Part shown: positions 2,555 to 37,030 of the stretch, in pieces | How positions within the stretch are numbered: position 1 is the stretch's first letter | Layout: every line of letters begins with the position of its first letter | Origin: Octopus bimaculoides | Lineage: Eukaryota | Length of the DNA stretch: 37,033 nt | Direction: 5' to 3' | Assembly: GCF_001194135.2 (NCBI RefSeq) | Contig: NC_068999.1 | Coordinates: 28,979,643 to 29,016,675 of the forward strand | The notes under the pieces: generated by a model | What the model was told of the DNA's origin: nothing | Databases searched by the model: none | The model's input: the letters and a program-made list of their open reading frames with translations, nothing else | Position numbers and translations under genes: made by a program

Positions 2555-2588
<34 letters not shown>

Positions 2589-2740: not shown

Positions 2741-2985
2741 TATTCAAGCAGAGAGAATTCTGTAATATATTTATATGCACAGAAGGACTATAAAATTTCA
2801 GCTAAATTAAGGTTGAGACTGGCTCAGAATAATTAAAATCATAATTCCTTTCAAATAACAATACTGTTAATCAAAAATTTGTTTAGCTTCTTAAAAAATC
2901 ATCAAAACTTGTGGCTGTAATTCTATATAAAGTATTAGGAAGAAAAAAAATGAGTATCCAAAACAGAATTAGTAATCAATCCTAC

Positions 2986-3183
2986 CTTATTAATTAAATG
3001 TTCAGTTACTACCTCACGTAGACCTGTATAGAGTTTTTCTCCATGTTTGTGTAACACCATTGTATAAGCATTACGATAAAGTTCTTCAAAACTAAGTCCA
3101 CTGTTGTTTTTTTTCTGTATTTCCTGTATAGCATTTCGTAACAATGTCCAAATACTATTAACATACTTCTCATCCATTGTCAT
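2986..3183 (-). CDS. CUL3: Cullin-3, second coding exon
   Basis: Translates [66 protein letters not shown], nearly identical to the human CUL3 N-terminus; acceptor ctttctcattacag| and donor AAG|gtagg; 198 nt, phase 0. Confidence 0.97.
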
Positions 3184-11642: not shown

Positions 11643-11702
11643 AGGAAAGGCCCTAATGCGCATCTTCGTGTCTCTCTTATGGGTTCTTAAACCGCCACTC
11701 AT
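11643..11702 (-). CDS. CUL3: Cullin-3, first coding exon
   Basis: ATG AGT GGC GGT TTA AGA ACC CAT AAG AGA GAC ACG AAG ATG CGC ATT AGG GCC TTT CCT|gtaagt = MSGGLRTHKRDTKMRIRAFP; DTKMRIRAFP matches human CUL3; consensus donor; joins in frame to 3183 across an 8459-nt intron. Confidence 0.95.
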
Positions 11703-14554: not shown

Positions 14555-14629
14555 GTATATATATGAGCATGTCTAGGCATGCAGCTATATGCATGTGAAT
14601 ACATACATAAAACAAAACATACAAATCTA

Positions 14630-16375
14630 CACATATGCATTCATGGTTACTAAGAGCTGTACAAGCCCTGTACAGAGATACCGCCAGTAAGGTGAGGGTT
14701 GGCAACGAGTATAGTGAAGATTTCTGGGTAGAAGTAGGGGTTCACCAAGGATCAGTCCTCTTATTCATTATAGTCCTCCAGGCAATAACAGAGGAATTCA
14801 AGACAGGCTGCCCCTGGGAGCTCCTCTATGCTGATGACCTTGCTCTAATAGCTGAGTCACTACCAGAACTAGAGATGAAGTTTCAAGAGTGGAAGCAAGG
14901 TCTAGAATCAAAGGGCCATAGAGTCAATCTAGCAAAAACCAAAGTCCTAGAAGGTGGACAAATCACAAACCCCTTCATGTAGATGGCCTTGCTCAATCTG
15001 TAGAAAAGGCATAGGTAGAAACTCTATAATCTATGGACACGTAAGAGGTGCAGCAATATCAAGGAAGATAGTTTTTGTGTGTGGCAGATGCACAGGGTCA
15101 ATAAACATCGAAGATGTACAGAAAACAGATTCCATCACATGCCAGGTGGGAGAAACTAGAAGTAGTTGATAGCTTCTGCTACCTAGGTGACCAAGTCTGT
15201 AGAAGGGGTGGATACTCTGAGAGTGTTGCCACTAGAATAAGAAAAACCTGGGCAAAATTCAGAAAGCTCCTACCTCTGCTGGTAACAAAGGGCCTCTTGC
15301 TCAGAGTGAAAGGTAGACTGTACGATGCATATGTGCAAACAGCCATGCTACATGACAGTGAAACATGAGCCATGACTGTCGAGGACATACGTAGGCTTGA
15401 AAGAAATAAAGCTTGTATGATCCACTGGATGTATAATGTCTGTGCATACATGACGGAGTGTATGTGCCCTGAGAGAAATGTTGGACATAAAAAGCATCAT
15501 ATGTAGTGTGCGAGTGAGATGACTGCACTGGTATGGTCATGTGCTGCATATGGATGAGGAGAGCTGTGTGAAGAAATGTCACACCCTAACAGTGGAAGGA
15601 ACCTGTGGAAGAGGCAGACCCAGAAAGACATGGGATGAGTTGGTAAAGCACAACCTTTGAACATTGAGTGTCACAGAGGCAATGACAAGAGATTGAGACC
15701 TTTGGAGATATGCTGTGATTGAGAAGACCCGGCAACTAAAGTGAGATCACAGCCGTGGCTGATACCAGTGTCGCATAACCAACCCATTTAAAAGTACCCT
15801 TGAATTGTCAGGTGATACGCTGTGCTTGAAAAGACCTGTTGAGTCAAGTGAAATCGAATCATGGCCAATGACCCAGCAAGTAAAGTGAGATCACAGCTAT
15901 GGCTGATACCAGTGTCGCATACCCAGCCCATTTAAAAGTACCCTTGAACCATCGGATGATATGCTGTGCTTGATAAGACCTATTGAGTTAAGTAAAATCG
16001 AAATCAGGATGGAAATCATAGTTGTGGCCAATGCCAGTGCTGCCTGACTGGCAACCATGCTGGTGGCACGTAATAAGCACCATTCAAGCATGGGTCGATG
16101 CCAGTGTCACCTGACTTTCTGCCAATGACACATAAAAAGCATCATCTAAATGTGGTCGATGCCAGTGCTGCCTGACTGGCTCCCATACCAGTGGCATGTA
16201 AAAGGTACCCACTACATTCTCAGAGTGGTTGGTGTTAGGAAGGGCATCCAGCTGCAGAAACTTTGCCAGATCAGACTGGAGCCTGGTGCAGCCAACTGGC
16301 TTGCCAGTCCTCAGTCAAACTATCCAACACATGCCAGCATGGAAACGGACGTTAAACGATGATGATGATGACGAT
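14630..16375 (+). mobile_element. 5'-truncated RTE-clade LINE with 3'UTR and (GAT)n tail, decayed
   Basis: VGVHQGSVL, WELLYADDLAL, VNLAKTKV, Cys-rich insert (WPCSICRKG...FVCGRC), FCYLGD, RVKGRLYDAYV, WYGHV, GRGRPRKTW; ORF ends ~15745; tail gatgatgatgatgacgatgac. Confidence 0.9.
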
Positions 16376-16869: not shown

Positions 16870-19800
16870 AACCCTAAACACTGCACCTAACATTAAATCT
16901 AACACTAAACCTAACAATAACAGTAACACTGAACCTAAACCTAACTCTAAAACTAAACCTAACCCTAACTATAAGCCTAACCGCTACCCTAACCCTAACA
17001 CAAATGCTAACCCCAAACCTAACACTAACCCTAAACCTAACTCTAACCCTAAAACTAACCCTAACCCTAAACCAAAGCCATGCCCTAACACTAACCCTAA
17101 CCGTAAACCTAACCCTGAACCTAACCATAATTCTAACCCTAGCCCTAACCCTAACCCTCACACTGACCCTAACCCAAAACCTAACACTAATCCTAGCACT
17201 AACTCTAACACTAACCATAAAAAGAACACTAAACCCTAATCCTAAACCTAGACATAACCCTAACCCTAACAGCAAACCTAAACCTAACACTAACTCTAAC
17301 ACTAAACCTTACATTAACAGTAAAACTAAACCTAACACTAACCCTAAACCTAAACCTAAACCTAACCCTAACACTAAACCTAACTCTAAGCCTACCACTA
17401 ACTCTAAACCTAAACTTAAACTTACACTAGCCCTAACACTAAATTTAACCCTAACCCTAACCCTAAACTTAACCCTAACCTAACCCTAAACCTAAACCTA
17501 ACCCAAACACTAAACCTAACTCTAAACCTAAACCTAACCCTAACCATAATACTAAATCCAGCCCTTCCTTAACCCTAACTCTAGCTCTAACACTATCACT
17601 TACCCGAACCCTAACATCAACCCTAACCCACACCTTAACCCTAAACCTAACACTAACCACAACAGGAACACTAAGCTTAATCCTAACACTAGACTTAAAC
17701 CTAACCCATGCCATATCCCTAAACCTAAGCCTAACATTAAATCTAACCCTAACCCTCAACCTGACACAGACCCTAACACAAAACCTAAACTTGACCCTAT
17801 TACTCACCCTAACCCTAACGTCAACCCTAAACCTAACACTAACTGTAACAGGAACACTAACACTAATCCTAACCCTTTACCTAACCCTAACCACAAACCT
17901 AAATAAACAAAACCCTAAACCTAACACTAGCTCTAACACTAAACATAGTACTGAAAGTAACACTAAATATAACATCAACCAAAACAGTAACCCAAACCCT
18001 AAACCTAAATCTAACCCTAAACCTAATCTTAACCTTAAACCGAACACTGACCCTAACCCAAAACCTAACCCTAACCCAATCCCTTACCCTAATCATAATG
18101 TCAACCCTTACCCACACCATAATACTAAACAACACTAACCATAACAGGAACACTAACCCTAATCCTAAACCTAACCCTAAATCTAATCCTAAATTTAACA
18201 CTAACCCTAACACAAGACCTAACCCTAAACCTAACTGTAATCCTAACTCTAACCCAAACTCTAACCCTTACCCTAAATGTAACGTTAACCTTAAACCACA
18301 CCTTAACCCTAAACCAAACACTAAACCTAACACTAACCGTAACACGAACACTAAGCCTAATTCTAACCCTAGACTTAACACTAAACCTAACCCTAACCGT
18401 AAACTTAACCCTAAACCTAACTCTAACATTAACACTAACCCTAACACTAATACTAATGCTAATACCAGCCATAGCCCTAACATTAACCATGGCAATAACC
18501 CTAACCCTACACATAACACTAACCATAAAACTAGTACTGACCCTAACCTAAAACCTAACCCTAACCCTTACACTAACCCTTACCCTAACCCTAACATCAA
18601 ACCTAACACTAAACTTAATACCAACCATATCAGGAGCACTAACCCTAATCATAACTCTAGACTTAACACTAACACTAACCATAACCGCAAACCTAAACAA
18701 AACCCTAGACCAAACACTAATCGTAACAGTAACATTAAACCTAATACTAACATTAAACCTAAAACTAACCATAACTCTAACCCTACCCCTAACCCGAAAC
18801 CTAACTCTAACTCTCACCCTATCCCTAACACTAAACCTAACCCTAAATCTAACCACAAACTTAAAAATAACATTAACCTAACACTAAACATAACTCTAAC
18901 AGTAACACTAAACCTAACCCTAACTCTAAACCTAACCCTAACCATAAGCCTAAACCTTACCCTAACTCGAATGCTAACCCTAAACCTAAACATAACCCTA
19001 ACCCTAAAACTAACCCCAACCATAGTGCTAACCCTAACCCTAAACCTCACCCTAACTCTAACCCTAGCACAAACCATAACCCTAGCACTAACCCTAACCC
19101 GAAACTTGACACTAACCCTAACCCGAAACTTGACACTAACCCTATCCCTTACCTTAACACTAAAGTCAAACCTAATGCACGCCTTAACCCTATGCCTAAC
19201 ACTAACCATAACAGGAGCTCTAGCCCTAATCCTAACCTTAGACTCACCTCTAACCCTAATCCTAACCACAAACTTACACAAATCATTAAACTTAACACTA
19301 ATGCTAGAACTAACTCTAACACTAAACTGAACACTAACAGCAACACTAAACCTAACATTCACCATAAGAGTAACCCTAACTCTCAACGTAAACCTTATCC
19401 TAACCATAACACTAACCCTAACCCTAAAACTAAACCGAACAATAAAACTAACACTAACCCTAACCCTAAACCTAACCCTAGCCCTAAACCGAAACCTATC
19501 CTACCCATAAAATTAAACCTAACCCTAACCCTAAACCGAACACAAAAACTAACCCTAATCCTAACCCTAAACCTAACACTAACACTAAACCTAAATCTAA
19601 CCCTAAACCTAACCCTAGACTTAACCCAAACCCTAGCCATAGCCCTAACCCTAAACCTAAGCCTAACTCTAACACTAACCTTAACCCTAAAAAAAAACCT
19701 GACATTTACCCTAACACGAAACCTAGCACTTAACCTAACCCTAACACTAACACACACCTTTAACCTAAACCTAACACTAACCATAACGGAAACACTAACC

Positions 19801-20659
19801 CTAATCGTAACCCTTGATCTAACCCTAACCCTATACACAAACCTAAACAAAACCCTAAACCTCACACTAACACTAACCCTAACCATAAACCTAACCCTAA
19901 CCCTAACCCTAACACTCACCCTAACCCAAAACCTATCACTAATCCTATTCCTTATCCTAACCATAACGTCAAATCTAACCCACACCTTAACCCAAAATCT
20001 AACATTAAACATAACACTAACCGTAAAAACAAACAACAACCCTAATCTTAACATTAGATTTAACCCGAAACCTAACCCTAATGGCAAACCTAAACAAAAC
20101 CTAACACTAATCCCAGTACTAACTCTAATTATAAACCTCACGCTAACAGTAACTAAACCTAACCCTAACCTTAAACTTAACCCTCACCCTAACCATAAAC
20201 TTAACCCTCACCCTAAACCTAACCCTAACACTCAACCTAACCCTAAACCTAACACAAACCATAACCAAAAAACTAACCCTAACCCTAAAACTAACCCTAA
20301 CCTTAACCTAAACACTAACCGTAACAGGAACACTAACCGTAACAGGAATACTAACCGTAACAGGAACATTAACCCTAACCCTAGATATAACCCTAACCCT
20401 AAGCACAAACCTGAACAAAACCTAAACCTAAACACTAACCATGATGCTAACTCTAACACTAAAACTTACACTAACAGTAACACTAAACCTCACCCTAACC
20501 ATAACATTAAACCTAAACCTAACTCTAGCCCTCACTCTAACCATAACCATAAACCTAACCCTAACCATAAACCTAACCCTAGCCCTAACACTAAACCTAA
20601 CCCTAACCTTAAACCGAAAACTAAAATTAACCCTAAACTAACCCTAACCCTAAACCTAA

Positions 20660-20728
20660 NNNNNNNNNNNNNNNNNNNNNNNNNNNNNNNNNNNNNNNNN
20701 NNNNNNNNNNNNNNNNNNNNNNNNNNNN
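20660..20728. other. Assembly gap (69 N) with an 85-bp exact duplication on its flanks
   Basis: 20575-20659 is identical to 20729-20813. Confidence 0.95.
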
Positions 20729-23700
20729 AACCCTAGCCCTAACACTAAACCTAACCCTAACCTTAAACCGAAAACTAAAATTAACCCTAAACTAACCCTA
20801 ACCCTAAACCTAACCCTAAACCTAAATGTAATACTATACCAAGCCCTAGCCCTAGATCTAACCCGAACCCTAAACCTAACACTAAACCTAAGAGTAACAG
20901 GAACACTAACCCTAGTCCTAACCCTAGACTTTACTCTAAACCTAACCCTAGCCAAAGCCCTAACCCTAACCCAGACACTGACCCTAACACAAAATCTAAA
21001 CCTAACCCTATCCCTTACCCTAACCCTAACAGACACCTTAACACTAAACCTAAAACTAAATCTAACACTAACCGTAACAAGGACACTAACCTTAATCCTA
21101 ACTGCAAACCAAAGAAAACCCTAAACCTAACACTAACCCTAACACTAACTCTAACACTAAACCCAACACTAACAGTATCACTAAATCTAACATTAACTGT
21201 AACAGTAACCCCAACCCTAACACAAAACATAAACCTAAACCTAACACTGACACTAATCCGAAACCTATCCCTGACCCAATCCCTTACTGTAATCGTAACG
21301 TCAAACATAACCCATACCTTCACCCTAAACAAAACGCTAAACCTAACACTAGCCGTAACAGGAACACTAACTTCAAACCCAACCCTACGGTTAACTCTAA
21401 TGCTAACCCTAACTGTAAACCTAAAAAATCTAGACCTAACACTAAACCTAAATCTAACTCTAACACTAAACCTAACCCTAACCATAATCTTAAACCTAGC
21501 CCAAGCCCTAACCCTAACAGAGACACTAATCCTATCCATTACCCTAACCCTAACGTCAAACCTAACCCACACCTTAACCCTAAACCTAACAATAAACTAA
21601 CACTAACCTCAACAGGAACACTAACCCTAAACCTAATACTAACCCTCATTCTAACCCTAACCCGGACACTGACACTAACCCGAAACCTCACTCCAACCCT
21701 AATCTTAATGCACACTCTAACCCTTAACCTAACATGAGACCTAACCCTAACCGTAACCGTAACACTAAACACTAGCCCTAACCCTAACCCTAAATCTAAC
21801 CCTATTACCTACACTAAGCCTAATGTTAAACCTAACCCACACCTTGACCGTAACTCGCACATTAAACATAACACTAACTGTAACAAGAACACTAACCCTA
21901 ATCCTAATGCTAGACTTAACCCTAACCCTAACCCTAGCCATAGCCCTAACCCTAACCCTAACTCTGAACCTATGACTAACCCTAAAACAAAACATAACCT
22001 TAATGCTAAACTTGACACTGACCCTAAAAAGAAACCTAACTCTAACCCTATCACTTATCTTAACCCTGAGGAAAACCCTCACACACACCTCAACCCTAAA
22101 CCTAACACTAACCGTAATGGGAACACTAACCCTAATCCTAACTCTAGACCTGATCGTAACCCTAACTGCAAACCTATACAAAACCCTAAACCTAACACCA
22201 ACCCTAACGCTAATTCTAACAATAAAACTAACAATAACAGTAACACTAAACCTAACATTGACAGTAACAGTAACCCTAACCCTAATACTAACGCTAACGC
22301 TAATAATAACACTAACCCTAGCCCTAACCCAACATTAAACGTAACCCTAACCAAAACACAAACACTACACCTCACCGTAAAACTAACCCTAAAACCTAAC
22401 TCCAACGCTAACCCGAATCCTAACCATAAACCTCACCCTCAATCTCACCCTAAACATAACACAAAACCTAACTGTAAAACTAACTCTAACATTAACCCTA
22501 ACCCTTACCCTAAACCTAACACTAACCCTAACTTTAACACTAACCCTCATCCTAACACTAAATCTAACCATAACCCTAAACTTAGCCATAAAACTAATGC
22601 TTACACAAATCCTAACACTAACCCTAACTGTAACCCTACCAGTAACCGTAATCCTCACCCTGACACTAACACTAACATTAAGCCTAAGCCTAATCCTAAT
22701 GTTAACACTAACACTAAAATTAGCACTAAACCTAAACTTAACCCTAACACTAAACTTAAACTCTACACCCTAACCCTAACCTTAACCCTCACTCAAACAC
22801 TAACCCTAAGTCTAACCCTAACACTAAACAAAATGCTAACTAACCCTAATACTAACCCTAACGCTTACCATAAGCCTAACCCAAAACTTAATCCTAAACC
22901 TAACCATAAACTTAACTCTAAAACTAACCCTAACACGAACCCTAACCCAAAAGCCAAACCTACACCGAAACCTAAACATAAGCCTAAAACTTACACTTAC
23001 ACTAACCCTCACCCTAATCCTAACCCTAACCCTAAACCTAACGCTAACCCAACCCCAAACCTAACCCTTAACCTATCCCTAACTCTAACCCTACCCTAAA
23101 ACTATCACTAACATTAATCCTAAACCTAACCCTAACACTAAACGAAAAACTAGCACTAACCCCAACACTAACTCTATACCTAACCTTCACCCTAACCTTA
23201 AACCTACCACTAACCCTAAACCTAACACTAACCCTAAACCTAACCCTTACCCTAACACTAAACCTAACCCTAACCCTAAACCTAATCCTAACCCTAAACC
23301 TAAACCTAACCAACCCTATCACTACTCCATGCCCTAAACCTAACCCTAACACTAACCCTAAAATATAACCCTAACCCGAACCCGAACCCCAAAACTCACA
23401 CTCAACCTAACCCTAAACCTAACCTTAAAACTGAACCTGGCCCTAACACTAACCCTAACCATACAACTAAGCCTAATCCTAACGCGAAACCTAGCCCTAA
23501 CCCTAAACCTAACGCATACAGTAAACCTAACCCTAACCCTAAACTTTAGACTACCCCTAACACTAACGCTAACCCCAAACCTATCCCTAAACCTTACAGT
23601 AAACCTAACCCTAAAACTAATTCTAACCCTAATCAAATGCTAAACATAACCGAAACCATAACACTAACCCTAAACCTAACTCTAAAACTAACCCTGACTT

Positions 23701-26700
23701 AAAAGCCTAATATTAACCATAAACCTAACCGGAACCTAACCCAAAACCTAACCAGAACCTAACCCAAAACCTAACCGGAACCTAACCCCAAACCTAACCT
23801 TCAACCTAATCCACAACCCTAACCTAAACCTAACACTAAACCTAGCCCTAATGTACACCGTCACCATAAAATTAAACCTAACCCTAAACCTAACCCTTAC
23901 ACTGACACGAACTGTAACCCTAACACTAAGCCTAACCATAAACCTAAACCTAACACTAACCCTGACCCTTACGTAACCCTGACACTAACCCTTACCCTAA
24001 TACTAACACTAACCGTAAACATAACCTAATCTAAATCTAAACATCACATTCAATATAACCCTAAACCTAACCCTAACATGAAAGCTAACCCTCATCCTAA
24101 CTCTAACACTCACCTTAACTGTAACCCTAAACCTAACACTAACACTCACCTTAACTGTAACCCTAAACCTAACACTAACACTTACCCTAACACTAACCAT
24201 AACGCTAACCATAAACTTAACCCTGAAACTAATGCTTACACCAGTCCTAACCCTAACCATAACATTAAACATAAGCCTAAACCTAACCCTAACACAGTAA
24301 CCCTAACTCTAACCCTGACCCTAACCCTCCCCTTAACCCTAAAACTAACGCTAAAACTAAACCTTAATCTAAACCTAAACCCTAAGCCAACCCTAACATT
24401 AACACTAACCCTAAACCTAACCTACTCCTAACACTTAACCTAAACCTTATCCTAACCCTAATCCTAAACCTAACGCTAACGCTAAACCTAAACCCTCCAC
24501 ACTGTCCCTAACCCTGATCCTCACCCTAAACCTCACACTAACCCTAACCATAACCCTGATAATAACAATGACCCTAACCCTAAATATAAACCCTAACACT
24601 AGCTCTAAATTTAACCCTAAACCTCACCCTAACCTGCACACTAAACTTAATGATTACACTAACCCTAAACCTAACCCCAACACTAACACTTAGCCTAAAC
24701 CTAATCTTAACCTAACCCTAACACTAACCATAACTTTAAAACTAATCCTAACCTTAACCCTAACACTAACCCTGCACCTAAACCTGACCCTTACTGTAAC
24801 CTTAACTGTAAATCTAACCCTAACCCTAACCCTAGCACTAACCCTAAACCTAACCCTGAACCTATCACTAACCGTAACCATAACTCTAACCCTCACCATA
24901 AACATAAACGTAACCTACCCCGAAACCTAACCCGAAACCTAACAAAGCCACTAACACTGACCTTACTCTAAACCTAAACCTACCCTAAACATAAACCTAA
25001 CTGAGCCCAACACTAACACTAACCCTAACCCTTAACTTAAACCTCACACTAACCCTAACACTTACCCTAACCCAAAACTTCACATTAACCTTAAAAATAA
25101 CCATAACCTTAAAACTAACCCTATCCCTATAACTAAACCTAACCTTACACACAACCCTAACCCAAACACTAATGTGAACCTAAATCCTAAAACCTTAAGC
25201 TAAACCTAACCCTAACCCTAAGACTAACCGTAACAATAAACCTAGACCTCACCCTGTCACTAACACTAAACCTAAACCTAACCCACACCCTAAAACTAAC
25301 CCGAACCCTAAACCCTAATGCTAAACTTAACCCTAGTCCTAACCCTAACACTAACCCTAAAATTAAACCTAACACTAGCCCTATCCCTAACACTAAACCT
25401 AACCCTAACCCAAACACTGACACTAACCATCAACCTAACTGTAAAACTAACCCTAAATCTAATCCTAACCCTAATGCTAATGCTAACACTAAACCTAACC
25501 AAAACCCATAAAACTAACCCTAACCCGAACACTAATCCTATCCCTAAAACCTAATCCTGACCATAACCCTAACCCTAAAGCTCACCATCAATATAGCCCT
25601 AACCCTAACCCTAACACAAAAACTAACCCTAAACATAACTCTAACACTAAACCTAACCGTCACCCTAAACCTAACACTAACCCTAATGTTAACACTTACC
25701 CTAACACTAACTGTAACCCTAACCCTAAAACTAACTTTTACACTAGTCCTAACCCTAACACTAAACAAAAACTAAACCTAAACCACACAGTAACCCTAAC
25801 CCTAACAATAACACTAAACATTAACCTAAACCAAAACTCTAAGCCAACACTAACGCTAACACTAACCCTAAACCCTGACCCTAACCCTGATCCTCACCCT
25901 AAACATACCCTAACACTGAAGATAACTGATACGAATACTGACGTTAACTCTAAACACAAACCTTAACCTTCACACTAAACCTGAACCTAACCCTAAACTT
26001 ATCCCTAACACTAAACCAACATCTCACCCTAACCGTAACACTACCACTAACCCTAAGACTAACACTAACCCTAATACTAACTCTAGGCCTAACCCTAATC
26101 CTACCCATAACCCTAACCCAAACACTATCTCTAAACCTAACCTTAACACAAAACCAAACCGAAAACTAACACTAACCCGAAACCCACCCCTCAACCTGAA
26201 CCTAACCCTAACCCTTATCCCAAACTTAAACGTAACCATAAGCCGAAGATTAATACTAACACTAACCCTAACCCTAAATCTAACCCTAACCTTAATGCTA
26301 ACTCAAACACTAACCCTAACACTAAACCTAATGCTAACCTTAAACCTAACCCTAACACTACACCTACCACTAAGCCTAAATTTAACCCTAAACCAATATC
26401 TAACCCTAACCCTTACCCCAAACTTAAATGTAACCATAAACCGAACATTAATACTAACACTAACCCTAACACTAACCCTAACTCTAAACCTAACCTTAAA
26501 TCTAACTGTATCACCCTAACACTATCCCTAATCCTAAACATAACCATAACCGTAACCTTAACTCTAACACTAACCCTAACCCTAACACTGACCATAATCT
26601 TTAACCTGACCAAGATGCTAACCCTAACTATCACCCGAACGCTAAACCTAAAACTCACCCTGAACCCAACTCTAACGCTAACACTTACCCTAACCCTAAA

Positions 26701-29700
26701 TTTAACACCAACCCTATCTCTAAAACTAACCCTAAACCTAACCGTAACCCTCAACCTAACCCTAAAACTAAACCTAACCAAAATCCTAAACCTAACCCTG
26801 ACCCTAACCCTAAACCTAACAATGAACTTAACCCTAACCCGAACAGGACCCTAACACTAACCCTCACCTTAAAACTAACACACACCATAACCCAATCCTA
26901 ACCATCGCCTTAACCCTAACCCTAACACAAACCCGAACCCTATTCCTAACACTATCTTTAACACTCACACTAACCCCAACCATAGGCCTGAACCTATTCT
27001 TCACTCTGACACTCATTCTAAACCTAACACTACCACTAACCCTAATCCTAACCCTAACATTAACCATAAACTTAACCCTCGAACTGATCTTAGCCCTAAC
27101 CCTAACACTAAACCAATGCGAAACTCTAAACCTATCCCTAACCCTAGCCCTAACATTCACCTTATCCCTAAAACCTAACCCGAACCCTAACCCTAAACCT
27201 ATCACTCAGCCTAAACCTAAACCTAAAAAAACCTTAAACCCAACCCTAACACTAAACATAACCCTAAACTTAATGCTTACACTAACGCTAAACCTAACCC
27301 TAACACTAACCCTAAACTTAACCCTAGCCCTAACCCAGACTCTAAACTTAAACCTGATCCTGACTCTAACCCCAACCGTCAATCTTACCCTACCCTAATC
27401 CTAACCCTCACTCTAACCCTAACCATGACCATATCCCTAACCCTTACCCTAATCCTAACATTAAGCTTAACCTAACACTAACACCAACAATTACCCTAAC
27501 ACTAACCCTCACCCTAATAATCCTTACCCTAACACTAAACCTAACATTTACATTAAACCTAACTCTAACCCAAACACTGACACTAACCATCAACCTAACT
27601 GTAAAACTAACCCTAAATCTAATCCTAACTCTAACGCTAACACTAAACCTAACCAAAACCCTAAAACTAACCCTAACCCGAACACTAATCCTATCCCTAA
27701 AACCTAACCCTGACCATAACCCTAACCCTAAAACTCACCATCAATAGAGCCATTAACTTAACCCTAACACGAAAACTAACACTAAACCTAACCGTCACCC
27801 TAAACTAACACTAACCACAATCCTAAACCTAACCTTAATCATACCCCTAACCCTTACCTTAACTGTACCCTTAACTCTCACCCTAAAAATATCTTTAACA
27901 ATAACTCTCCCATATCCCTAACCCTAAACCAAAATGTATGCGTAACTGTAACCCTAACCTAACTGTATTACTAACCCTAAGCCTGAACCTTAAACCCTAA
28001 CCCGAAACCTAACCCAAATCCTAAACCTAACCCGAATCCTAATCTTCACACTAACCCTAAAACTAACTCTAATCCTAACACTAATCCTAACCCCTAGCAC
28101 TAACGGTAACACTCACCCTAACCCTATCACTAATCCTAACTCTAAACCTAACACTAACGCTAAACATTACCCTAACCCTAACCATCACCATAACACTAAA
28201 AACAACACTAAACCTAACACTAACACTAACCCTAGCCCAACCCTAAAACTAACGCTAAACCTATCCCGAACCCTAACACTAAACACAACCCTAATCCTCA
28301 GCCTAACCCTAACACTAATCCAAATCCTAACCATAACCCTTACCTGATCCCTAAACCTAACCTTAGCACTAACCTTAACCGTAATGCTAACCCTATCGCT
28401 AACATTAACATTAACTCTACACCTAACACTAAACCTAAATCTAACCCTAACCATAACCCTACATTTAACATTAATCATAATGCTAAAACTAATCCTCAAA
28501 CGTAACCCTAAAGATCACCCTAAATCTAACCCTAACCCTAACACTAACACTAACCCTAACCTTAACATTAAACCTGACCCTAAACCTAACACTAACTCTA
28601 ACACTAACCCTAAACAACTCTAAGCATAACCCTAACACACACCTTAACCATAACGCTAACCTTAAACCTAACCCTAACCCTACCCTAACACTAACCCTAA
28701 CCCTGACACTAAGCCTAAACCTAAACCTAAACCTAGCACTAACCCTAATGCTAATCCTATCTCTAACCATAATCCTAACACTAAACCATAAACTCTACCC
28801 TGAACCCAAATACTAAACTTCACACTAACCCTAAACCTAACTTATACACAACCTTAACTCTCACCCTAAACATAACCCTTACCCTAAACCTAACCATAAC
28901 CATTACCTTTACATTTACTCTATACTTATCCCTAACCATAACCCTAACCCTAAACCTAACCCTAACTCTAACCCTAACACTAACATTGACCTTAAACCTA
29001 ACCCTAGCCCTCACATTAACCCTAAACCTAACAATCACACTCACCATAACCATAACCCTGAATCTAATCCTAACCTTAGCCCTAACCCTAACTCTAAACC
29101 TAAACCTAACCCTAATGCTAACAGTAACCCCAACCCTACCCTAAACCTAAACCTAACACTAACCCTTAACTTAACCCTAAAACTAACCTGAAACCTAAAC
29201 CTAACCATAAACCTAAACCTAACCATAACGCTAAACCTAAGCAGAAAACTAACACTAACGCTAACCCTACCACGAACTCTAACCCTGACGATAAAATTCA
29301 CACTAACCCTAACCCTAAACCTAACCTGAATTCAACCCTTATCTTAACCCTAAAGTTAATCCTAACACTATACTTAAACCTAACCCTACTAGTAACCCTA
29401 ACCATATCCCTAACTTTAACACTAGCCCTAACCGCAATCCTAACCAAAACACTAACACTAACACCAACCCTAAACCGAAACCTAGCCTTCACCCTAAAAC
29501 CTAACCCCAACCCTAGCGTTAACCCTAACACTAACACTCACACTCACACTAGACCTAACCCTAACACTAAACCCAATCCTACACCTAAACCTACCCTTAC
29601 GCTAAGCTTAACCCTAACACTAACCTTAAACCTACCCCACTATCTATTCCTAACACTCAAGCTAACCCTAACACTAAACCTAACTGACAACCTAACGCTA

Positions 29701-32055
29701 ACACAACCCTAATAATAAACCTAACCCTAATACTAACTCCAACCCTAATACTAACTCCAATCCTAATACTAACTCCAACCCTAATACTAACACTATCCCT
29801 TACCCTAAATCTAACCCTAACCCAAACCTCCAACGCTAACCCTCAGCCTAACACTAACGCTAACCCTAACCCTAATCCTATCGCTTATACTAATCCTATC
29901 CCTAACACTAACATTAACCCTAATCCTAAACCTAACCCTAAAACTAACCCAAACACTAACCCTCAACCTAGCCCTAAACCTAATCATGAACCTAACACTA
30001 ACCCTGACACTAACCCTATCACTAAACCTAAATCTAACCATAATTCTTACCCTAACGATAACCCTCACCCAAACCCTAACCCAAACACTAACGTTAAACC
30101 TAACCCTCACCCTCACCCAAATACTAACCCTATCACCAAACCTAACACTAAGCCTCACCCTAAACCTAAACCTAACCCAAACCCTAACTTTAACACTAAG
30201 ATTAGCACTAAACCTAATGCTAACCATGAAATTAACCCTAACCCTAGCCCTCACACGAACCCTAACCCTAACACTCACACTAAACATAACCCTAACCCTA
30301 ACCATAGCCCTAACCCGAACCCTAACACTAAACCTAACCATAAACCTAAACCTATTCCTAGTGCTAAACCTACAAAGAAACCTAACACTAAACCTCATCC
30401 TAACCCTAACACTAACACTCACACTAAACCTAACCCTAAACTTAACCTAACCCTAAACCTAAATCTACACCTAACACTAACCCTAAACCTAATCGTAAAC
30501 CTGCCCCACTATCTATTCCTAACCCTCAACCGAACCCTAACACTAAACCTAAACGAAAACCTAATGCTCACCCCACACCTAACAATAAACCTAACACTAA
30601 ATCTAACCCTAACCTTAAACCTAATTCTCACACTTGCCCGAAAATTTACCCTAAACCTCACTCGTAAACTAACCATAAACCTAACCCTAATGATAACCCC
30701 CAACCCTAATACTAACGCTATCCCTAACCCTAAATCTAACCCTAACCACAAGGCTAACCCTCACCCTAACATTAAGCCTAACCCTAACCTTACACTAATT
30801 ATTTCCTTAACACTAACACTAACCATAAACCTAATCTTAAACCTAACCCTAACCCTAACCCAATACATAACCCTAAATCTAACCCTTACCCTAACGATAA
30901 CCCTCATCATAATCCTAACACTAAACCTAACCCTAACCCTAACCTTAACCCTAACCTTAAACCTAACCCTAACCCAAACACTAACCCTAGCCGTAACACA
31001 AAACATAACACCATGACCCTAACACTAAACCTAACACTAACCCTCACCCTAAACCTAAACTTAGTCCTAACCCAAACCCTCACTCTAATCCTAACCTTAG
31101 TACTAACACTAACCTTAGCCCTAAATCTAACCCTAAACTTAACCCTAACACTAAACCTAACGCTAACCATAAAACTAACCCTAACTCTAACCCTAATTCT
31201 AACCATAACCCAAACCCTAACTCTAAAACTAACCCTAACCCTAAAACCTGACCATAACCCTAACCTGAACCCTAACCCTAAACCACACTTTCAACCTAAA
31301 ACTAAATCTAACCCTAACTCGAAACCTAAACCTAAACCTAACCCTAACATTAACACTAAACCTAAATCTAACCTTAACCCTAACACTAACTCTAACCCTA
31401 AACCGAACCATATTCCTAACCCTAAACCTAACCTTAACTCTCACCCTAACCCTAAAACTAGCCTTAACCCTAACCCTAACCCTAACACTAACCCTAACTA
31501 TAAACCTAACCCTCAGCCTTACCCTAACCCTATCCCTAAGCCTGACCTGAACTCTAACCCTAAACTTAATCCTCACCCTAACCCTAAACTTAACCCTCAC
31601 CTAACCCTAAGCCGAAACCAAACCCTAAACCTAACCCTAATCCTTAATCCTAAAGTTTGTACTAATCCTAACCCTTACCTTAAACTTAAAATTTGCACTA
31701 ATCCTAAACCTAAGCCTAACATTAACCTTAAACTTCAATCTACCCCTAACTCTAACTCTAACCCTAATCCTAAACCTAATCCTAATCCTAACCCTAATCC
31801 TTAAACCTAAAGTTTACACTAATCCTAAACCTAAGCCTAACATTAACCTTAAACTTCAACCTACCCCTAACTCTAACTCTAACCCTAAACCTAACCCTAA
31901 TACTAGCCCTAAACCTAACCGTAACCCTAAACCTACACTAACACTAAAACTAACCCTAAGCCTTACACAAACCCTAACCCTAACTGAAACCCTAACCCGA
32001 ACCCAAACTCTAACCCTTAACATAACCCGAGACCAAACCCTAAACCTAACCCTTA

Positions 32056-32284
32056 TTTCATTATTACCCACAAGGGGCTAAACATAGAGGGGACAAACAA
32101 GGACAGACAAAGGGATTAAGTCGATTACATCGACCACAGTGTGTAACTGGTACTTAATTTATCGACCCCGAAAGGATGAAAGGCAAAGTCGACCTCGGCG
32201 GAATATGAACTCAGAACGTAACAGCAGGCGAAATACCGCTAAGCATTTCACCCGGCATGCTAGCGTTTCTACCAGCTCGCCGCC
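32056..32284 (-). mobile_element. Apparently full-length tRNA-derived SINE with candidate 13-bp TSD
   Basis: Minus strand starts GGCGGCGAGCTGGTAGAAACG (A-box-like) with GAGTTCATATTCC (B-box-like); aacctaaccctta at 32043-32055 and 32287-32299; CpGs intact. Confidence 0.85.
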
Positions 32285-32615
32285 TTAACCTAACCCTTAA
32301 CCTAACCCTACCCCAACCCTAACACTAACCCTAATACTAACCCTAAACCTAAACCTATGCTAGCCCTAAACCTAACACACTAACCCTACACTTAATGCTA
32401 GCCCTAAGCCTAACCCTAATTCTAACCTTAACCTTAACCCTAACACTAACCTTAACACTAAACCTAACCCAGACCCTAAACCTAACTCTAACCCTAACAC
32501 TAAACCTAACCCTGACCATAACCCTCACACTAACACTAAACCTAACCCTAACTATACACCTAAGCCTAACCCTGTCCCTAACCCTCACCCTAAATATAAC
32601 CCTTACCCTAACTCT

Positions 32616-32728
32616 AAGGTTTAACATGCACTAAGAATACATTTACCAAACATCTCACTGAACTTCAAGCTTTTCAAATTAATCGTTTGAAAATTTTCAA
32701 ACTAGAAATATTTGTTTTCACATTTAAT
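32616..32728 (+). repeat. Isolated, internally deleted satellite monomer inside the hexamer array
   Basis: atttaccaaacatctcactgaa...tttgaaaattttcaaactagaaatatttgttttcacatttaat matches the 34848-36598 monomers. Confidence 0.85.
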
Positions 32729-34847
32729 AACCCTAACCCTCACTCTAAATCTAAACCTAACTCAAGCCTAAACCTAACCCTAAACCAAACCTTAACCCTA
32801 ACACTATCCCCAACCCTAAAACCTAAACCTAGCCCTCAAACTCACTCGAACCCTAATCCTAAACCTAACACTCAACCTAGCCCTAACCCTAACCATAACC
32901 CTAATCGTAACCTTAATCTAAACCCTAATCCTAACCATAACCCTAAACCTACCTTTCACCCTAAACATATCCCTAACCCTAATTCTCACCCTAACATTAA
33001 CCCTAACCGAAACCCTAACACTAAACTTAATCCTAACCCTCACTCTAACCCTTACCCTTACACTAACTCTACCCTAACCCTAAACTTAACCCAAACCTAA
33101 CAATAAACATAACCCTAATTCTAACACTAACCCTAACGTTTACTCTATCCCTAACCCTTACGCTAACCCTAACGCTAACCTTAACTCTAACCCTAACCCT
33201 TACCCTAAGCCTAAACCTAACCCTTACCCTAAGCCTAAACCTAACCCTACTCCTAAAGTTTTAGGTTACCCTAAAACTTACATTAACCCAAACCTATCCC
33301 TAACCCTCACCCTAATCCTAAGCTTAAACCTAACAGTCACATTAACCATAAACCCTACACTAACCCTAACACTAAATCTAAACCTAACCTTAAACATAAC
33401 TCAAACCCTAACCCTAACACTAAAACTAATGCTAACCTTAAAACTAAACCTAAATCTAACCCTAATCCTAAACCTAACCATAACACTAACCCTAACACTA
33501 ATCATAACCCGAGATATAACTCTAACACTAAACTTAACCCTAACCATTACCCTTACCTTCACATTAACCCTAAACTTATCATTAACCCTAACCCTAAACC
33601 TAAAACTAATAATAACACTAACCCTAACCTTAAAACTAATTCTAACTCTAACCATCAACTTAACGATAACCCTAACCTTAACCCTAACTCTAACTCAACC
33701 CAAAACCCTAACCCTAATACTAACCCTAAACATATCCCTAACCCTAAACCTCACCCTAACACTAACCCTAACCCTATACCTAACCCTTAACCTAACCTAA
33801 CCCTGACCCTAAACCTAAACTTAAACCTAACACTAACTCTAACCCTAACACTAACCATAACCCTTACCCCAACACTTACACTAACCCTAACCCCAACCCT
33901 ATTCTTAACCCTAAACTTACCCCTGACTCTAAACATAACCCAAACCGTAACCCTAACTCTCACCCTAAACCTAACCGTAACACTAACCCTTAACCCTCAA
34001 ACTTACACTAAACCTGACCCTAAATCTAATCCTGGCCTGAAACTTAATCAAAACCCTAACACTAAATCTAAACCTAACCTTAACACTAACCCTAAGTCTC
34101 ACCCTAACACTAAATCTAACGCTAACCCTAACCCTAAACCTATCCCAACCGTTCACTCTAAACCATTACGCTAATCCTAACCCTAACCAAAAACCGAAAC
34201 CTAACCCTACCCTAACCATAAACCTAATCCGAACACTACTCCAAACCCTAACTCTAACACTAATTCTAACCCTAACCCTAACCTTAACCCTAACCCTAAT
34301 TCTAACCATAACCCTAACCCTAACCCTAACGCTGACCCTCTCCTTAACCCTAATCCTGACACTAAAACTAAACCTAAACCCAAACCTAACCCTCGCCTTA
34401 ATCCTAACCCTAACCATAACAGTAACCCGAATCCTAACCCTAATCCAATCTCTAAAACTAAACCGAACACTAACTCTTACCATCACCCTATCCCAAACCC
34501 TAACCCAACAGTACACCCTAAACCATTACGCTAAGACTAACCATAATACTAACACTATTCCTCATATAACCCTAACCCTAAACCTAACACTAAACTCTAA
34601 ACCATTACGCTAACCCTAACCATAATCCTAACTTTAACGCTCACCCTAACCCTAACCCTAAACTTAACCCTAACCCGAACTCAAACCCTAAACCCTAGCC
34701 CAAACCCTAACCCTTACCTTAAACCTAACGTAACCCTCACTTTAAACCTTAAACGCTAAACCTAGACCTAACCCTAACCCGAACCCTAAATATAACGCTA
34801 ACCCTGACACTAACCCTAACCCTAAACCGTACATTAACCCTAACCCT

Positions 34848-36598
34848 AGATGTGAAGATTATCTTTACTAAACGTTTCACTGAAAGCTCAAACTTTCTCA
34901 AAAAATATGGAGTTGCAAAATGCTGCAAATCAGCATGACATCGTTTTCAAATGAGAAATATTTGCTTTCAGATTTAATAATCCTAACCCTAATCCTAACC
35001 CTAAACCTAACTCTAAAACTAACCTTAACCCTAAACCTATCCCTAAACCTAACCCTAACCCTAAACCTATACCTAACCCTAACTCTAAACCTAGTCATAC
35101 TCTCAAAAGCAATTATATTACAATATTTTTTATGATACACACTTCGCAGATTCAGAAGTAAAGGTTTAATATACATTGACAGATAGAGGTGAAGAATATA
35201 TTTTCCAAACATTTCACTGAATTTTAAGCCTCTTCAGAAAATATGACTGTTGGAGATGACGATTTACCAAATATTTCATTGAAATCTCAAGCTTTCTCAG
35301 AAAGCATGAAGTCACAAAATGTTTGAAATTAGCATGAAATTGTTTCAAAAATATTGAAATAAAAGTTCTTGTTTTCACATTTACACTGAATTTTAATTTT
35401 TCTGACAAACACTCATCATACATACACACCTTTTTATACACACTTGTGGGATTGAGAAGTGATGTGAAGATTATATTTTACGGAACTCTGAAAACGAAGT
35501 TGCAAAATGTTGCAAGCATTTATCACATTATTCTTAATGTACATACTACACGGATTCAGAAGTTAAGGTTTAATATACGTTAACAGAAAACGTGAAGTCA
35601 CAAAATGTTGGAAATCAGCATGAAATTATTTGAAAATTTTGAATTGAAATAGTCTTTGCCCATATACTGTTTACTCATTCATGACTTTACATTTCTTTGA
35701 CACGTTAGAGGTGAAGAGTGATTTTACCAAACATTTCACTGAAATCTCAAGCTTTCTCAGAAAACGAAGTCGAAAAATGTAAAACAGAATGAAATTTTTT
35801 GGAAATTTTGAAATAAAAAATTCTTATTTTCCGATTTTCTAAATAATCATTTGTGACTTTCATATTACTGACACACACTTGTTTGATTCGGAAGTAATAG
35901 GTTAATCTACATTAACTGGTAGATGTGAAGATTATATTTACCAAACATTTCACTGAAATCTCAAGCCTCATTAGAAAACATGAAGTTGTAAAATGTTGCA
36001 ATTCAGAATAAAATTGTTTAGAAATTTGGAAATGAACAATTTTTGTTTTCGCATTTAGTATTTAGTCATTTATGACATTTCATGGGTTAATATATGTTAA
36101 CTATTAAAAGTGAAGGGTATATTTACAAAACCTTTCACTGAAATCTCAAGTTTTCTCAGATAACATTAATTTACAAAACGTTGGAAATTCTTGTTTCCCC
36201 CAATTACAATGAACACATTGGTGAATTTTAATCGGATTGAGAAGTAATTTATTAAAATACATTATCTGATAGTTGTGAAGATTATATTAACTAACCATTT
36301 CACTGAAATCTCAACAATTCTCAGAAAACATGTCGACCGAAATTGTTGGAAAATTTTGAAATGAAAAATTCTTGATTTCGCATTTATATTTACACATTTG
36401 TGACTTTTAATTTTACTGACAATCACTAGTCCGATTGATAGGTAATTGGTTAATATACATTAACTGGTAGATGTGAAGATTATATTTACTAAACATTTTA
36501 CTGAAATCTCAAGCTTTCTCAAAAAGCATGCAGTTTCAAAATCAACATGAAATCATTTGAAAATTTTCAAATGAGAAATATTTGTTTTCGCATTTAAT
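34848..36598 (+). repeat. Diverged AT-rich satellite, ~165-215 bp period
   Basis: Anchor tttcactgaaatctcaa (or variant) at 34875, 35212, 35274, 35734, 35948, 36133, 36298, 36496, usually preceded by agatgtgaagattatattt. Confidence 0.9.
34979..35093 (+). repeat. Short telomere-like tract within the satellite
   Basis: ~19 degenerate CCCTAA units. Confidence 0.9.
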
Positions 36599-36700
36599 AA
36601 CCCTAACCCTGAACCTAACACTAACCCTAACAATACTCCTAACACTAACCCTACCACTAACCTTACCTCTTACCCTAACCTTACTAATAACCCTAAACCT
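36599..36700 (+). repeat. Short telomere-like tract ending at the palindrome
   Basis: ~17 degenerate CCCTAA units. Confidence 0.9.
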
Positions 36701-36748
36701 TATAGGAAAGTGGTTATACACCATTAGGTGTACACCCGCTTTCCTATA
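36701..36748. other. 48-bp near-perfect palindrome (22-bp arms, 4-nt loop)
   Basis: tataggaaagtggttatacacc-atta-ggtgtacacccgctttcctata; 19/22 arm positions complementary. Confidence 0.9.
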
Positions 36749-36756
36749 TTAATTTC

Positions 36757-37030
36757 TGTAGAAACAACGCAACGCAGAACTCTGAACTATCAACACAACA
36801 ATATTTATTTACAGAGGAAATAGGCAGCACTTCGCCCTTTGGTTGCTGAGACGCCGTCAATGATGTTGAGAGGTTATTTGTCTAGCTCCAGAGTTGGAAT
36901 GTTGGAGACACTGCTTGACATGACCATACTCATGGCCGGCCGGCCGAGAAAGAGAATGAATTGAGCGGGAACGTTTAGATGTTGAATTCCACGCATGCGT
37001 GAGACTACGCATGTGCACGGCGTTACTACA
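36757..37030 (-). mobile_element. Probable LTR (274 bp) of an LTR retrotransposon
   Basis: TG...CA termini with 8/9 inverted match (tgtagaaac / gttactaca); minus-strand AATAAA at 36804-36809 near the 3' end; CpG-rich; following 'acc' could begin a polypurine tract on the minus strand. Confidence 0.6.

What the first reader, a model, noticed from the sequence alone, without database searches (positions are those of the whole stretch)
16870..34847. 18 kb phased telomere-variant array ~5 kb upstream of the CUL3 start codon
About 3000 hexamers keep 6-bp register over long stretches while most units are imperfect (7/20 perfect at 17041-17160; 2/19 at 33424-33537); I saw no perfect runs beyond roughly 3-4 units. 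Strong phase with high substitution load is unlike a simple decayed microsatellite and suggests repeated amplification of variant units. Interstitial telomeric sequences are known in many animals, but one this long and uniformly degenerate beside a housekeeping promoter merits study as a chromatin boundary, fragile site or karyotype-rearrangement scar.
Basis: partly seen in the sequence, partly recalled or inferred. Interest (0 to 1): 0.7.

Follow-up and report, generated by a model that had tools for sequence, protein, structure and literature searches.

The report
Ancient interstitial telomere-like array in octopus
About 18 kb of decayed telomere-type hexamers lies inside an octopus chromosome 5 kb upstream of CUL3; it is real, shared with a second octopus species that split off about 34 million years ago, shows no sign of constraint, and is a large but ordinary example of a known class.

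Summary
TRF reports one 6-nt array at 16899-34848: 2,991 copies, 64% matches, 2% indels. Identity to CCCTAA is 79%, 20% of units are perfect, and no perfect run exceeds 3-4 units.

The N gap at 20660-20728 is spurious. The 85 nt on each side are identical, so the two contig ends overlap and the array is continuous, about 154 nt shorter than written.

The window is Octopus bimaculoides. The O. sinensis orthologue lies at 17.7 Mb of a 53.9-Mb chromosome in a separate assembly. It has the same array at the same junction, with shared variant units and the same base profile. The array is therefore real, interstitial and older than the ~34-My split; my rough estimate is about 100 My.

There is no higher-order repeat or recent amplification. 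Units behave almost as independent draws, and register persistence fits the local substitution-to-indel ratio. However, C-to-A changes at C1 and C2 far exceed the flank spectrum, and the C1 and C2 changes are mutually exclusive. This suggests built-in TTAGGT and TTAGTG variant units, or a position-specific mutation bias.

The array runs in one orientation, so it is not a head-to-head fusion. Its right side abuts a ~190-nt satellite carrying short hexamer tracts. Verdict: an old, apparently unconstrained interstitial telomeric sequence, a new member of a known kind.

The parts
16870..32617 (+). Main degenerate (CCCTAA)n array, about 15.7 kb as written. It includes the false gap and the SINE-like insert listed below.
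   Evidence: TRF. Wrap-around alignment gives 79% identity. The left junction and variant units are shared with O. sinensis.
20660..20813 (.). Assembly artefact: 69 N plus a second copy of the 85 nt that precede the gap (20575-20659 equals 20729-20813).
   Evidence: Exact 85/85 match. 46 of the 88 duplicated 40-mers in the whole array come from this pair.
32056..32286 (-). SINE-like retroposon inserted into the array. It is flanked by a 13-nt target-site duplication, AACCTAACCCTTA, at 32043-32055 and 32287-32299.
   Evidence: Read directly from the sequence. The G-rich, low-identity bins at 31870-32470 mark it. No tRNA or Rfam match, so the class is inferred.
32618..32728 (+). Partial copy of the X satellite unit, interrupting the array.
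   Evidence: 92% identity over 50 nt to the end of the X unit at 36551-36600. Sequence read.
32729..34847 (+). Second hexamer tract, 2.1 kb. It is slightly less decayed: 26% perfect units and A at C2 of 0.15.
34848..34977 (+). X satellite unit ending in ...CATTTAATA.
   Evidence: 82% identity to 36468-36600. Repeat families D4-D7.
34978..35093 (+). Third short hexamer tract, 19 units, with a weak 18-nt period.
   Evidence: TRF.
35094..36597 (+). Degenerate tandem array of X units, spaced about 165-215 nt and 72-85% alike.
   Evidence: the repeat finder families D2, D4-D10. BLAST of X against the window.
36598..36700 (+). Fourth short hexamer tract, again starting right after CATTTAATA.
   Evidence: TRF. 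Sequence read.
11643..11702 (-). CUL3 coding exon 1 (MSGGLRTHKRDTKMRIRAFP, followed by GT).
   Evidence: 100% match to Octopus cullin-3-B.
2983..3183 (-). CUL3 coding exon 2.
   Evidence: 100% identity to the octopus proteins.
14635..14982 (+). LINE reverse-transcriptase fragment in the 5-kb spacer between CUL3 and the array.
   Evidence: Pfam RVT_1, E = 3.7e-7.

Best explanation
This is an old interstitial telomeric sequence: a one-orientation block of about 3,000 TTAGGG-type hexamers inside an Octopus bimaculoides chromosome.

The most likely history is as follows. The block was laid down, or last homogenised, in essentially one episode, well before the O. bimaculoides / O. sinensis split of about 34 My. 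My rough estimate is of the order of 100 My. It formed next to a ~190-nt satellite (X) that itself carries short hexamer tracts. It probably started as a mixture of canonical units and two variants, TTAGGT (ACCTAA) and TTAGTG (CACTAA).

Since then it has evolved as unconstrained DNA. Point substitutions accumulate at or above the flank rate. Length changes come mostly from whole-unit slippage, which keeps register. There are rare duplications of 0.1-0.9 kb, and one retroposon has inserted.

Shown:
- the array is real;
- its position is interstitial;
- it is shared between the two species;
- the decay is uniform, with no higher-order structure;
- the gap is false.

Inferred: the single-episode origin, the built-in variants, the age, and the absence of function. 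Any present effect would be passive, through about 415 residual YTAGGGTTR sites and an extreme G/C strand asymmetry.
For: Array statistics:
- Overall structure and unit composition.
- Identity to the consensus per 300 nt: mean 0.790, sd 0.0238, against a binomial sd of 0.0235.
- In-register unit identity at lags 1-50 is 0.648-0.664, against 0.653 for independent draws.

Species and position:
- O. bimaculoides cullin-3 models end ...DTHFFSS exactly as window ORF 2935-3207 does; O. sinensis has Q at that position.
- The O. sinensis locus is CM016877.1:17,740,602-17,769,124 of 53,884,001 bp.

Orthology of the array:
- The left junction is the same in both species, followed by the same variant units.
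- Exact shared 24-51-mers are colinear.
- Orthologous blocks are 90-95% identical. Non-orthologous gapped controls give 79-81%.
- O. sinensis shows the same base profile: A 24% and 28% at C1 and C2, overall identity 77%.

No sign of constraint:
- 109 differences in 1,075 aligned array sites, against 4.6% over 8.8 kb of flank.
- Of the 16 gaps in the three orthologous blocks, 9 are multiples of 6 nt.
- O. sinensis has an ~886-nt internal duplication that the window lacks.

Variant units:
- C-to-A is 22-24% at C1 and C2, against C-to-T at 9%.
- In the flank, transitions are 67% of changes and the C/A class 15%.
- Double-A units are depleted, 95 against 156 expected.
- A at C2 declines along the array, p = 1e-5.

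Split date of 34 My: PMC10700109.
Against: - Only the first ~2.75 kb of the window's array could be cross-checked. L001, the fetched O. sinensis locus, ends inside the array. The other 15 kb rest on one short-read-based assembly, which already contains one false gap.
- Between-species differences at C1 and C2 still show more C/A changes (15 C/A against 21 C/T) than the flank spectrum predicts. A continuing position-specific mutation bias, or exchange between units, could therefore explain the A excess without built-in variants.
- Decay is not perfectly even. Identity rises from about 0.775 to 0.805 from left to right, p = 0.007. T4 conservation also rises, p = 6e-4.
- Adjacent identical units are depleted, 148 against 181, z -2.8. 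Plain independent decay does not predict this.
- The age depends on an assumed starting composition and on a flank rate that may be partly constrained. Estimates run from 90 to 360 My.
- Absence of function is an argument from lack of constraint, not a test.
Confidence: 0.72

Rival explanations
1. Fossil chromosome end. The array would be a former terminal telomere with its subtelomeric satellite (X units interspersed with telomere-like tracts) on the right. A rearrangement would have internalised it by joining the telomere tip to the CUL3-side DNA at 16870.
For: - With CCCTAA on the plus strand, a left chromosome end would have its subtelomere on the right. That is where the X satellite and the short same-orientation hexamer tracts lie.
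- No X-like sequence occurs on the left side, z at most 1.3.
Against: - Variant units are commoner on the supposed distal (left) side than next to X: A at C2 is 0.27 on the left and 0.15 on the right. In human telomeres variant repeats are concentrated proximally (my own knowledge).
- Whether X occurs at present-day octopus chromosome ends could not be checked.
- Octopod karyotypes have been stable at n = 30 (PMC10700109), so the event would have to be old.
Confidence: 0.3
2. Expansion of a satellite's or mobile element's own microsatellite. The hexamer tract would be a component of the X repeat unit, always starting after CATTTAATA, and one or two copies would have grown to kilobases by slippage or unequal exchange. 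The telomere likeness would come only from a short seed.
For: - Four tracts (32729, 34978, 36598, and the main array ending at an X piece) have the same orientation and the same start point relative to X.
- The review notes that interstitial telomeric sequences are often flanked by mobile elements and satellites (PMC6410037).
- Octopus has the highest microsatellite count among 719 surveyed eukaryotes (PMC6387519).
Against: - The main 15.7-kb tract has no X unit at its left edge.
- X is not found elsewhere in about 47 kb of window and O. sinensis sequence.
- Growth by slippage should leave neighbouring units more alike, but they are slightly less alike than chance.
- The starts of the tracts are not clearly co-duplicated: 0.71 identity, at the 95th percentile of background.
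Confidence: 0.25
3. Selected functional element. The array would serve as a heterochromatin block, insulator or binding platform for telomere proteins, kept upstream of the CUL3 promoter.
For: - Position and junction have been retained for at least 34 My in two species.
- About 415 YTAGGGTTR-type sites remain.
- Shelterin proteins bind degenerate interstitial arrays in mammals (PMC6410037).
Against: - Array sites differ between the species about as much as, or more than, the flanks: 10% against 4.6-7.4%.
- Length and internal arrangement differ freely between the species.
- Only 10 G-quadruplex motifs survive in 18 kb.
- A 5-kb spacer rich in mobile-element fragments separates the array from the CUL3 ATG.
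Confidence: 0.07
4. Assembly or sequencing artefact, or the proximal part of a true telomere misplaced by scaffolding.
For: One false gap with an 85-nt overlap shows that the assembler struggled here. The right-hand 15 kb are not independently confirmed.
Against: - The same junction, variant units and base profile appear in the separate O. sinensis assembly.
- 99% of 30-mers in the array are unique, so it can be assembled.
- Errors are substitution-type with a fixed position pattern, not indel noise.
- Non-telomeric DNA lies on both sides of the array.
- The O. sinensis locus is 17.7 Mb from the chromosome start.
Confidence: 0.04

Closest known systems
[quoted passage not shown]
   Same: Many units carry one or more substitutions. 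The orientation is single. The block lies next to a tandem satellite that carries further short telomere-like tracts.
   Different: This array is far longer, about 18 kb against hundreds of bp. Its orthologue lies 17.7 Mb inside a chromosome rather than in a subtelomere.
Heterochromatic interstitial telomeric sequences (het-ITS) of vertebrates, for example the Chinese hamster, and the pericentromeric blocks of telomeric repeats and variants in cycads (PMC6410037, PMC9827991)
   Same: A large internal block of telomere-type repeats that includes variant units, usually read as a relic of rearrangement followed by amplification.
   Different: Those blocks reach hundreds of kb to Mb, sit near centromeres and are often homogenised. 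This one is 18 kb, lies 5 kb from a gene start, shows no homogenisation, and its chromatin state and distance to the centromere are unknown.
Human 2q13-q14 fusion ITS
   Same: A degenerate internal telomere array that marks old history.
   Different: The fusion ITS is two arrays head to head, (TTAGGG)n-(CCCTAA)n. Here all 18 kb run in one orientation, with no perfect TTAGGG on the plus strand.
Interstitial and subtelomeric TTAGGG repeats reported in the slug Deroceras laeve genome (PMC12506671)
   Same: A mollusc with TTAGGG-type telomere motifs and interstitial tracts on its chromosomes.
   Different: That report is at chromosome-map level, with no unit-level or cross-species analysis. My four literature searches touching this question found no report for a cephalopod.

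Membership tests
Interstitial telomeric sequence (general) | Tandem array of the telomere-type hexamer | tested here: met
   Period 6, consensus CCCTAA/TTAGGG, 2,991 copies.
Interstitial telomeric sequence (general) | Internal, non-terminal chromosomal position | tested here: met
   Non-telomeric DNA lies on both sides in the window. The orthologue is at 17.74 Mb of a 53.88-Mb O. sinensis chromosome.
Interstitial telomeric sequence (general) | The motif equals the host's own telomere repeat | not testable with these tools
   No octopus chromosome end was available. TTAGGG is reported for other molluscs (PMC12506671). For octopus it is assumed.
Fusion ITS | Two arrays head to head, in opposite orientation | tested here: not met
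   There are zero perfect TTAGGG on the plus strand in any 1-kb bin of the array, against 26-44 CCCTAA per kb.
Heterochromatic ITS (het-ITS) | Very large block, hundreds of kb to Mb | tested here: not met
   About 18 kb in O. bimaculoides and at least 4.9 kb seen in O. sinensis.
Heterochromatic ITS (het-ITS) | Centromeric or pericentromeric location in heterochromatin | not testable with these tools
   No centromere map or chromatin data were available.
Subtelomeric-type degenerate ITS | Degenerate units next to subtelomeric repeat families | tested here: inconclusive
   The units are degenerate and the array abuts the X satellite. Whether X is a subtelomeric family is unknown.
Subtelomeric-type degenerate ITS | Location within a subtelomere | tested here: not met
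   17.7 Mb from the nearest end in O. sinensis.
Short ITS (telomerase-mediated break repair) | A few to about 25 hexamers | tested here: not met
   About 3,000 units.
True telomere | Terminal position with long perfect repeat runs | tested here: not met
   The longest perfect run is 3-4 units, and the array is flanked on both sides.
Higher-order-repeat satellite | Periodic similarity at a multiple of the basic unit | tested here: not met
   Autocorrelation decays monotonically. Unit identity at all lags equals the independent-draw value.

The most novel reading that the evidence does not exclude
The array plus the X satellite is the fossil of a chromosome end, telomere and subtelomere together. 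It would have been internalised during the rearrangements that built the octopod or coleoid karyotype, so it would mark an ancestral chromosome junction. Its unusual TTAGGT/TTAGTG content would record the variant-repeat make-up of cephalopod telomeres at that time.
Probability: 0.15. Interest if true: 0.6.

Novelty: new member of a known kind. Interest (0 to 1): 0.3.

Why it matters
Interstitial telomeric arrays are used as markers of chromosome rearrangement, and they are known sites of breakage and shelterin binding in vertebrates. My searches of the held paper library found none described for a cephalopod.

This one is unusually tractable. It is so decayed that nearly every 30-mer is unique, so it can be aligned between species unit by unit. 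That allows dating and gives a direct view of how a telomere-type array mutates: whole-unit slippage, position-specific C-to-A change, and loss of identical neighbours.

If the X satellite proves to be subtelomeric, the locus would pinpoint an ancient chromosome junction in a lineage known for large-scale genome reorganisation. Otherwise it is a well-characterised but ordinary piece of old repetitive DNA. The practical point is that the assembly gap inside it should be closed.

Tried and rejected
- A megablast hit suggested colinearity across 3.8 kb of array. A gapped global alignment then gave 51-53% shared variants. The same aligner gave 42-46% on non-orthologous array pieces, so I dropped that statistic. 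I relied instead on exact shared 24-51-mers and stringent block alignments.
- Higher-order repeat or alternating unit types: only weak negative neighbour correlations and no periodic signal.
- X-like sequence at the left junction: none, z at most 1.3.
- Co-duplication of X plus the start of its tract: inconclusive. My start coordinate for the 32729 tract was a base or two out of register with the other two, so only the comparison of the 34978 and 36598 tracts is usable.
- A LINE 3' end abutting the array: rejected. The reverse-transcriptase fragments end by about 15.4 kb, and 16191-16371 is a different interspersed repeat.
- tRNA and Rfam scans of the window: nothing found.
- Fetching more of the locus through P0001, P0121, P0122 and two long array ORFs: not on record.
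- The O. bimaculoides genome paper (PMC4795812) is not held.
- I ran no further search on the Pro/Asn-rich array translation, because low-complexity hits would be uninterpretable.
- Oxidative G-to-T damage as the cause of the C-to-A excess: it fits poorly. The hot positions correspond to the middle and 3' G of GGG, whereas the 5' G is the usual oxidation hot spot (my own knowledge).


Full report
**1. The observation**

The window has ordinary composition up to about 16.87 kb. It then switches for 18 kb to A 40%, C 36%, T 20%, G 3.5%, with 26-44 perfect CCCTAA per kb and no TTAGGG on the plus strand.

Tandem Repeats Finder reports a single period-6 array at 16899-34848: 2,991.5 copies, 64% matches, 2% indels. 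Base autocorrelation is 0.636 at lag 6. It declines smoothly at multiples of 6, while the flank stays at 0.28-0.30 at every lag.

A wrap-around alignment to cyclic CCCTAA gives about 79% identity and 192 frame-shifting indel events. Of 2,814 clean units, 573 (20%) are perfect, and the longest perfect run is 3-4 units. Half of the array lies in constant-register runs of at least 214 nt, the longest 746 nt, and all six registers are used.

Its two local counts are slightly low: I find 10 of 19 and 4 of 18 in the best register.

**2. The assembly gap, tested first**

The 85 nt before the gap (20575-20659) are identical to the 85 nt after it (20729-20813). In this array 99% of 30-mers are unique, and only 88 40-mers occur twice. 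Of those, 46 come from this pair.

The two contig ends therefore overlap. The gap is false, the sequence is continuous, and the true array is about 154 nt shorter than written.

**3. Species and gene**

CUL3 exon 2 lies at about 3183-2983 and exon 1 at 11702-11643, both on the minus strand. The array starts 5,168 nt upstream of the ATG.

Exons 1 and 2 match Octopus cullin-3-B at 100%. O. bimaculoides models end ...[15 protein letters not shown] exactly as the window's read-through ORF does, whereas O. sinensis has Q in place of H. The window is therefore O. bimaculoides.

The 5 kb between CUL3 and the array are a patchwork that includes a LINE reverse-transcriptase fragment (Pfam RVT_1, E = 3.7e-7).

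**4. Independent confirmation and position**

The O. sinensis orthologue was fetched as locus L001 (GCA_006345805.1, CM016877.1:17,740,602-17,769,124, of 53,884,001 bp). It is colinear with the window from the region downstream of CUL3 exon 2 up to and into the array. Its first 4.9 kb are the same kind of array.

Evidence that the two arrays are orthologous:
- The left junction is the same in both species (...AAAAATCCTTGCAA|...) and is followed by the same variant units.
- Exact shared 24-51-mers fall on consistent diagonals.
- Stringent alignment of three blocks gives 90-95% identity.
- In-register non-orthologous units give about 65%, and gapped alignment of non-orthologous pieces gives 79-81%.
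- The O. sinensis array has the same base profile: A 24% and 28% at C1 and C2, identity 77%, longest perfect run 3.

The degenerate sequence is therefore real. It was already degenerate in the common ancestor, about 34 My ago (PMC10700109). It lies a third of the way along a chromosome, not at an end.

There is a limit to this check. L001 ends inside the array and corresponds only to the first ~2.75 kb of the window's array. O. sinensis carries about 2 kb extra there, including an ~886-nt duplication whose copies are 93% alike.

**5. How it evolves**

Flanks differ by 4.6% over 8.8 kb, with 6.5 substitutions per indel. The kilobase next to the array differs by 7.4%.

Orthologous array blocks differ by about 10%, 109 of 1,075 sites. 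Of their 16 gaps, 9 are multiples of 6 nt. So there is no sign of constraint. Length changes are mainly whole-unit slippage, which leaves register intact.

The array-wide ratio of about 20 substitutions per visible frame shift is therefore expected. Persistent register with a heavy substitution load does not call for a special process.

Several results point to one age for the whole block and no later homogenisation:
- Identity to the consensus per 300 nt has sd 0.0238, against 0.0235 for pure binomial sampling.
- Unit-to-unit identity in register is 0.648-0.664 at lags 1-50, against 0.653 for independent draws.
- Only a few short internal duplications exist. The best is 246 nt at 92% identity.

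**6. What plain decay does not explain**

- At C1 and C2, A reaches 24% and 22% while T is only 9%. At C3, A is 8.5% and T 10%. In the flanks, transitions make up 67% of differences and the C/A class 15%.
- Units with A at both C1 and C2 are depleted, 95 against 156 expected, z -6.3. Other double changes are near expectation.
- A at C2 falls from 0.27 on the left to 0.15 on the right, p = 1e-5. Overall identity rises slightly, from 0.775 to 0.805.
- Adjacent identical units are fewer than chance, 148 against 181, z -2.8.

My reading is that roughly a third of the units were variant types, ACCTAA (TTAGGT) and CACTAA (TTAGTG), when the array formed. About 11% per-site decay was then added on top. 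This is an inference.

A continuing position-specific C-to-A bias, or exchange between units, is not excluded. Between-species differences at C1 and C2 still show 15 C/A against 21 C/T.

The shortage of identical neighbours fits preferential loss of homogeneous runs by slippage. That is also an inference.

**7. Age**

Using only the T, A, A positions, the distance from the consensus is K = 0.12. The flank rate is 0.024 per lineage per 34 My, which gives about 175 My. If the array evolves twice as fast as the flank, as the block comparison suggests, the figure is about 90 My. Using all six positions gives up to about 360 My, but that is inflated if variants were built in.

The safe statement is that the array is several times older than the 34-My split.

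**8. Surroundings**

The array is interrupted by two elements:
- a 231-nt SINE-like insert at 32056-32286, with a 13-nt target duplication;
- a 111-nt piece of a repeat I call X, at 32618-32728.

To the right lie, in order: a 2.1-kb tract, one X unit (34848-34977), a 116-nt tract, about 1.5 kb of tandem degenerate X units (35094-36597), and a 103-nt tract.

Each tract begins right after ...CATTTAATA of an X unit, and all tracts have the same orientation. X is absent from the left junction and from the rest of the window and L001.

Two origins fit this layout. One is a former left chromosome end: telomere, then subtelomeric satellite with telomere-like islands, then unique DNA. The other is a satellite or mobile element whose own hexamer tract expanded. 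I cannot separate them without genome-wide data. The single orientation excludes a head-to-head telomere fusion.

**9. Comparison with known classes (definitions from PMC6410037)**

It is an interstitial telomeric sequence. It fails the tests for three classes:
- short ITS, because it has about 3,000 units;
- fusion ITS, because it has one orientation;
- het-ITS as usually defined, because it is 18 kb rather than hundreds of kb. Its chromatin state and distance to a centromere are unknown.

It most resembles subtelomeric-type degenerate blocks in sequence style and in having a satellite neighbour. It differs in being far longer and in not lying in a subtelomere.

Four literature searches touching this question found no description of such arrays in cephalopods. 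A slug genome paper reports interstitial TTAGGG tracts at map level. Octopus is noted for the highest microsatellite count among 719 eukaryotes.

**10. Verdict**

The array is an old, apparently unconstrained, interstitial telomere-like block shared by two Octopus species.

The argument for repeated amplification is not supported, although built-in variant units are plausible. Functional roles are untested, and the lack of constraint speaks against them.

It is a new member of a known kind and of modest interest. The interest would rise if X proves to be subtelomeric and the site marks an ancestral chromosome junction.

Noticed in passing
window 32056-32286 (target duplication at 32043-32055 and 32287-32299): A SINE-like retroposon of 231 nt sits on the minus strand with an A-rich tail. 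It is inserted into the hexamer array and flanked by a 13-nt target-site duplication, AACCTAACCCTTA. ARAGORN and Rfam gave no match.
   Followed up: partly
window 34848-36597 and 32618-32728: A local degenerate tandem satellite (X) has units spaced about 165-215 nt and contains the palindrome TTTGAAAATTTTCAAA. Four hexamer tracts each start right after its ...CATTTAATA. X is absent from the rest of the window and from the O. sinensis locus L001.
   Followed up: partly
window 36700-36748: A 10-nt inverted repeat, TATAGGAAAG...CTTTCCTATA with a 28-nt loop, lies directly after the last hexamer tract. It could be a terminal structure of a mobile element.
   Followed up: no
window 36988-37020: The right edge of the window is richer in G+C and carries CACGCATGCGTG and CGCATGTGCACG motifs. 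These resemble housekeeping-promoter (NRF1-type) sites, so a neighbouring gene may start just beyond the window.
   Followed up: no
window 2935-3207 (-), and proteins P0001, P0121, P0122: The public 102-109-aa cullin-3-B models of O. bimaculoides and O. sinensis consist of exon 1 plus exon 2 read through into intron 2 (...INKV|[10 protein letters not shown][H/Q]FFSS*). They are either truncated annotation products or a short isoform. Later CUL3 exons lie outside the window.
   Followed up: partly
L001 about 500-1200 and 1390-2090 (O. sinensis): O. sinensis carries an internal duplication within its array, offset 886 nt, with copies 93% alike. O. bimaculoides has a single copy, so the array changes length by segmental duplication as well as by slippage.
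   Followed up: partly
window 13203-15368 (+): LINE reverse-transcriptase fragments lie here. ORF 14635-14982 matches Pfam RVT_1. ORFs 13203-13484 and 15114-15368 look RT-like but gave no Pfam hit. All lie in the spacer between CUL3 and the array, and the region is colinear in O. sinensis.
   Followed up: partly
window 2320-2568 and 16191-16371; L001 25397-25669 and 28022-28210: An interspersed repeat of about 190 nt lies next to a perfect (AT)30 microsatellite and occurs at several places in both species. One copy lies 500 nt left of the array.
   Followed up: no
window 15726-16002: A 144-nt unit is tandemly duplicated, 1.9 copies at 87% identity, about 0.9 kb left of the array.
   Followed up: no
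window 16870-34847: Adjacent identical hexamers are under-represented, 148 against 181 expected (z -2.8). Perfect-perfect neighbours are depleted at lags 1 and 2. One possible cause is preferential loss of homogeneous runs by slippage.
   Followed up: partly
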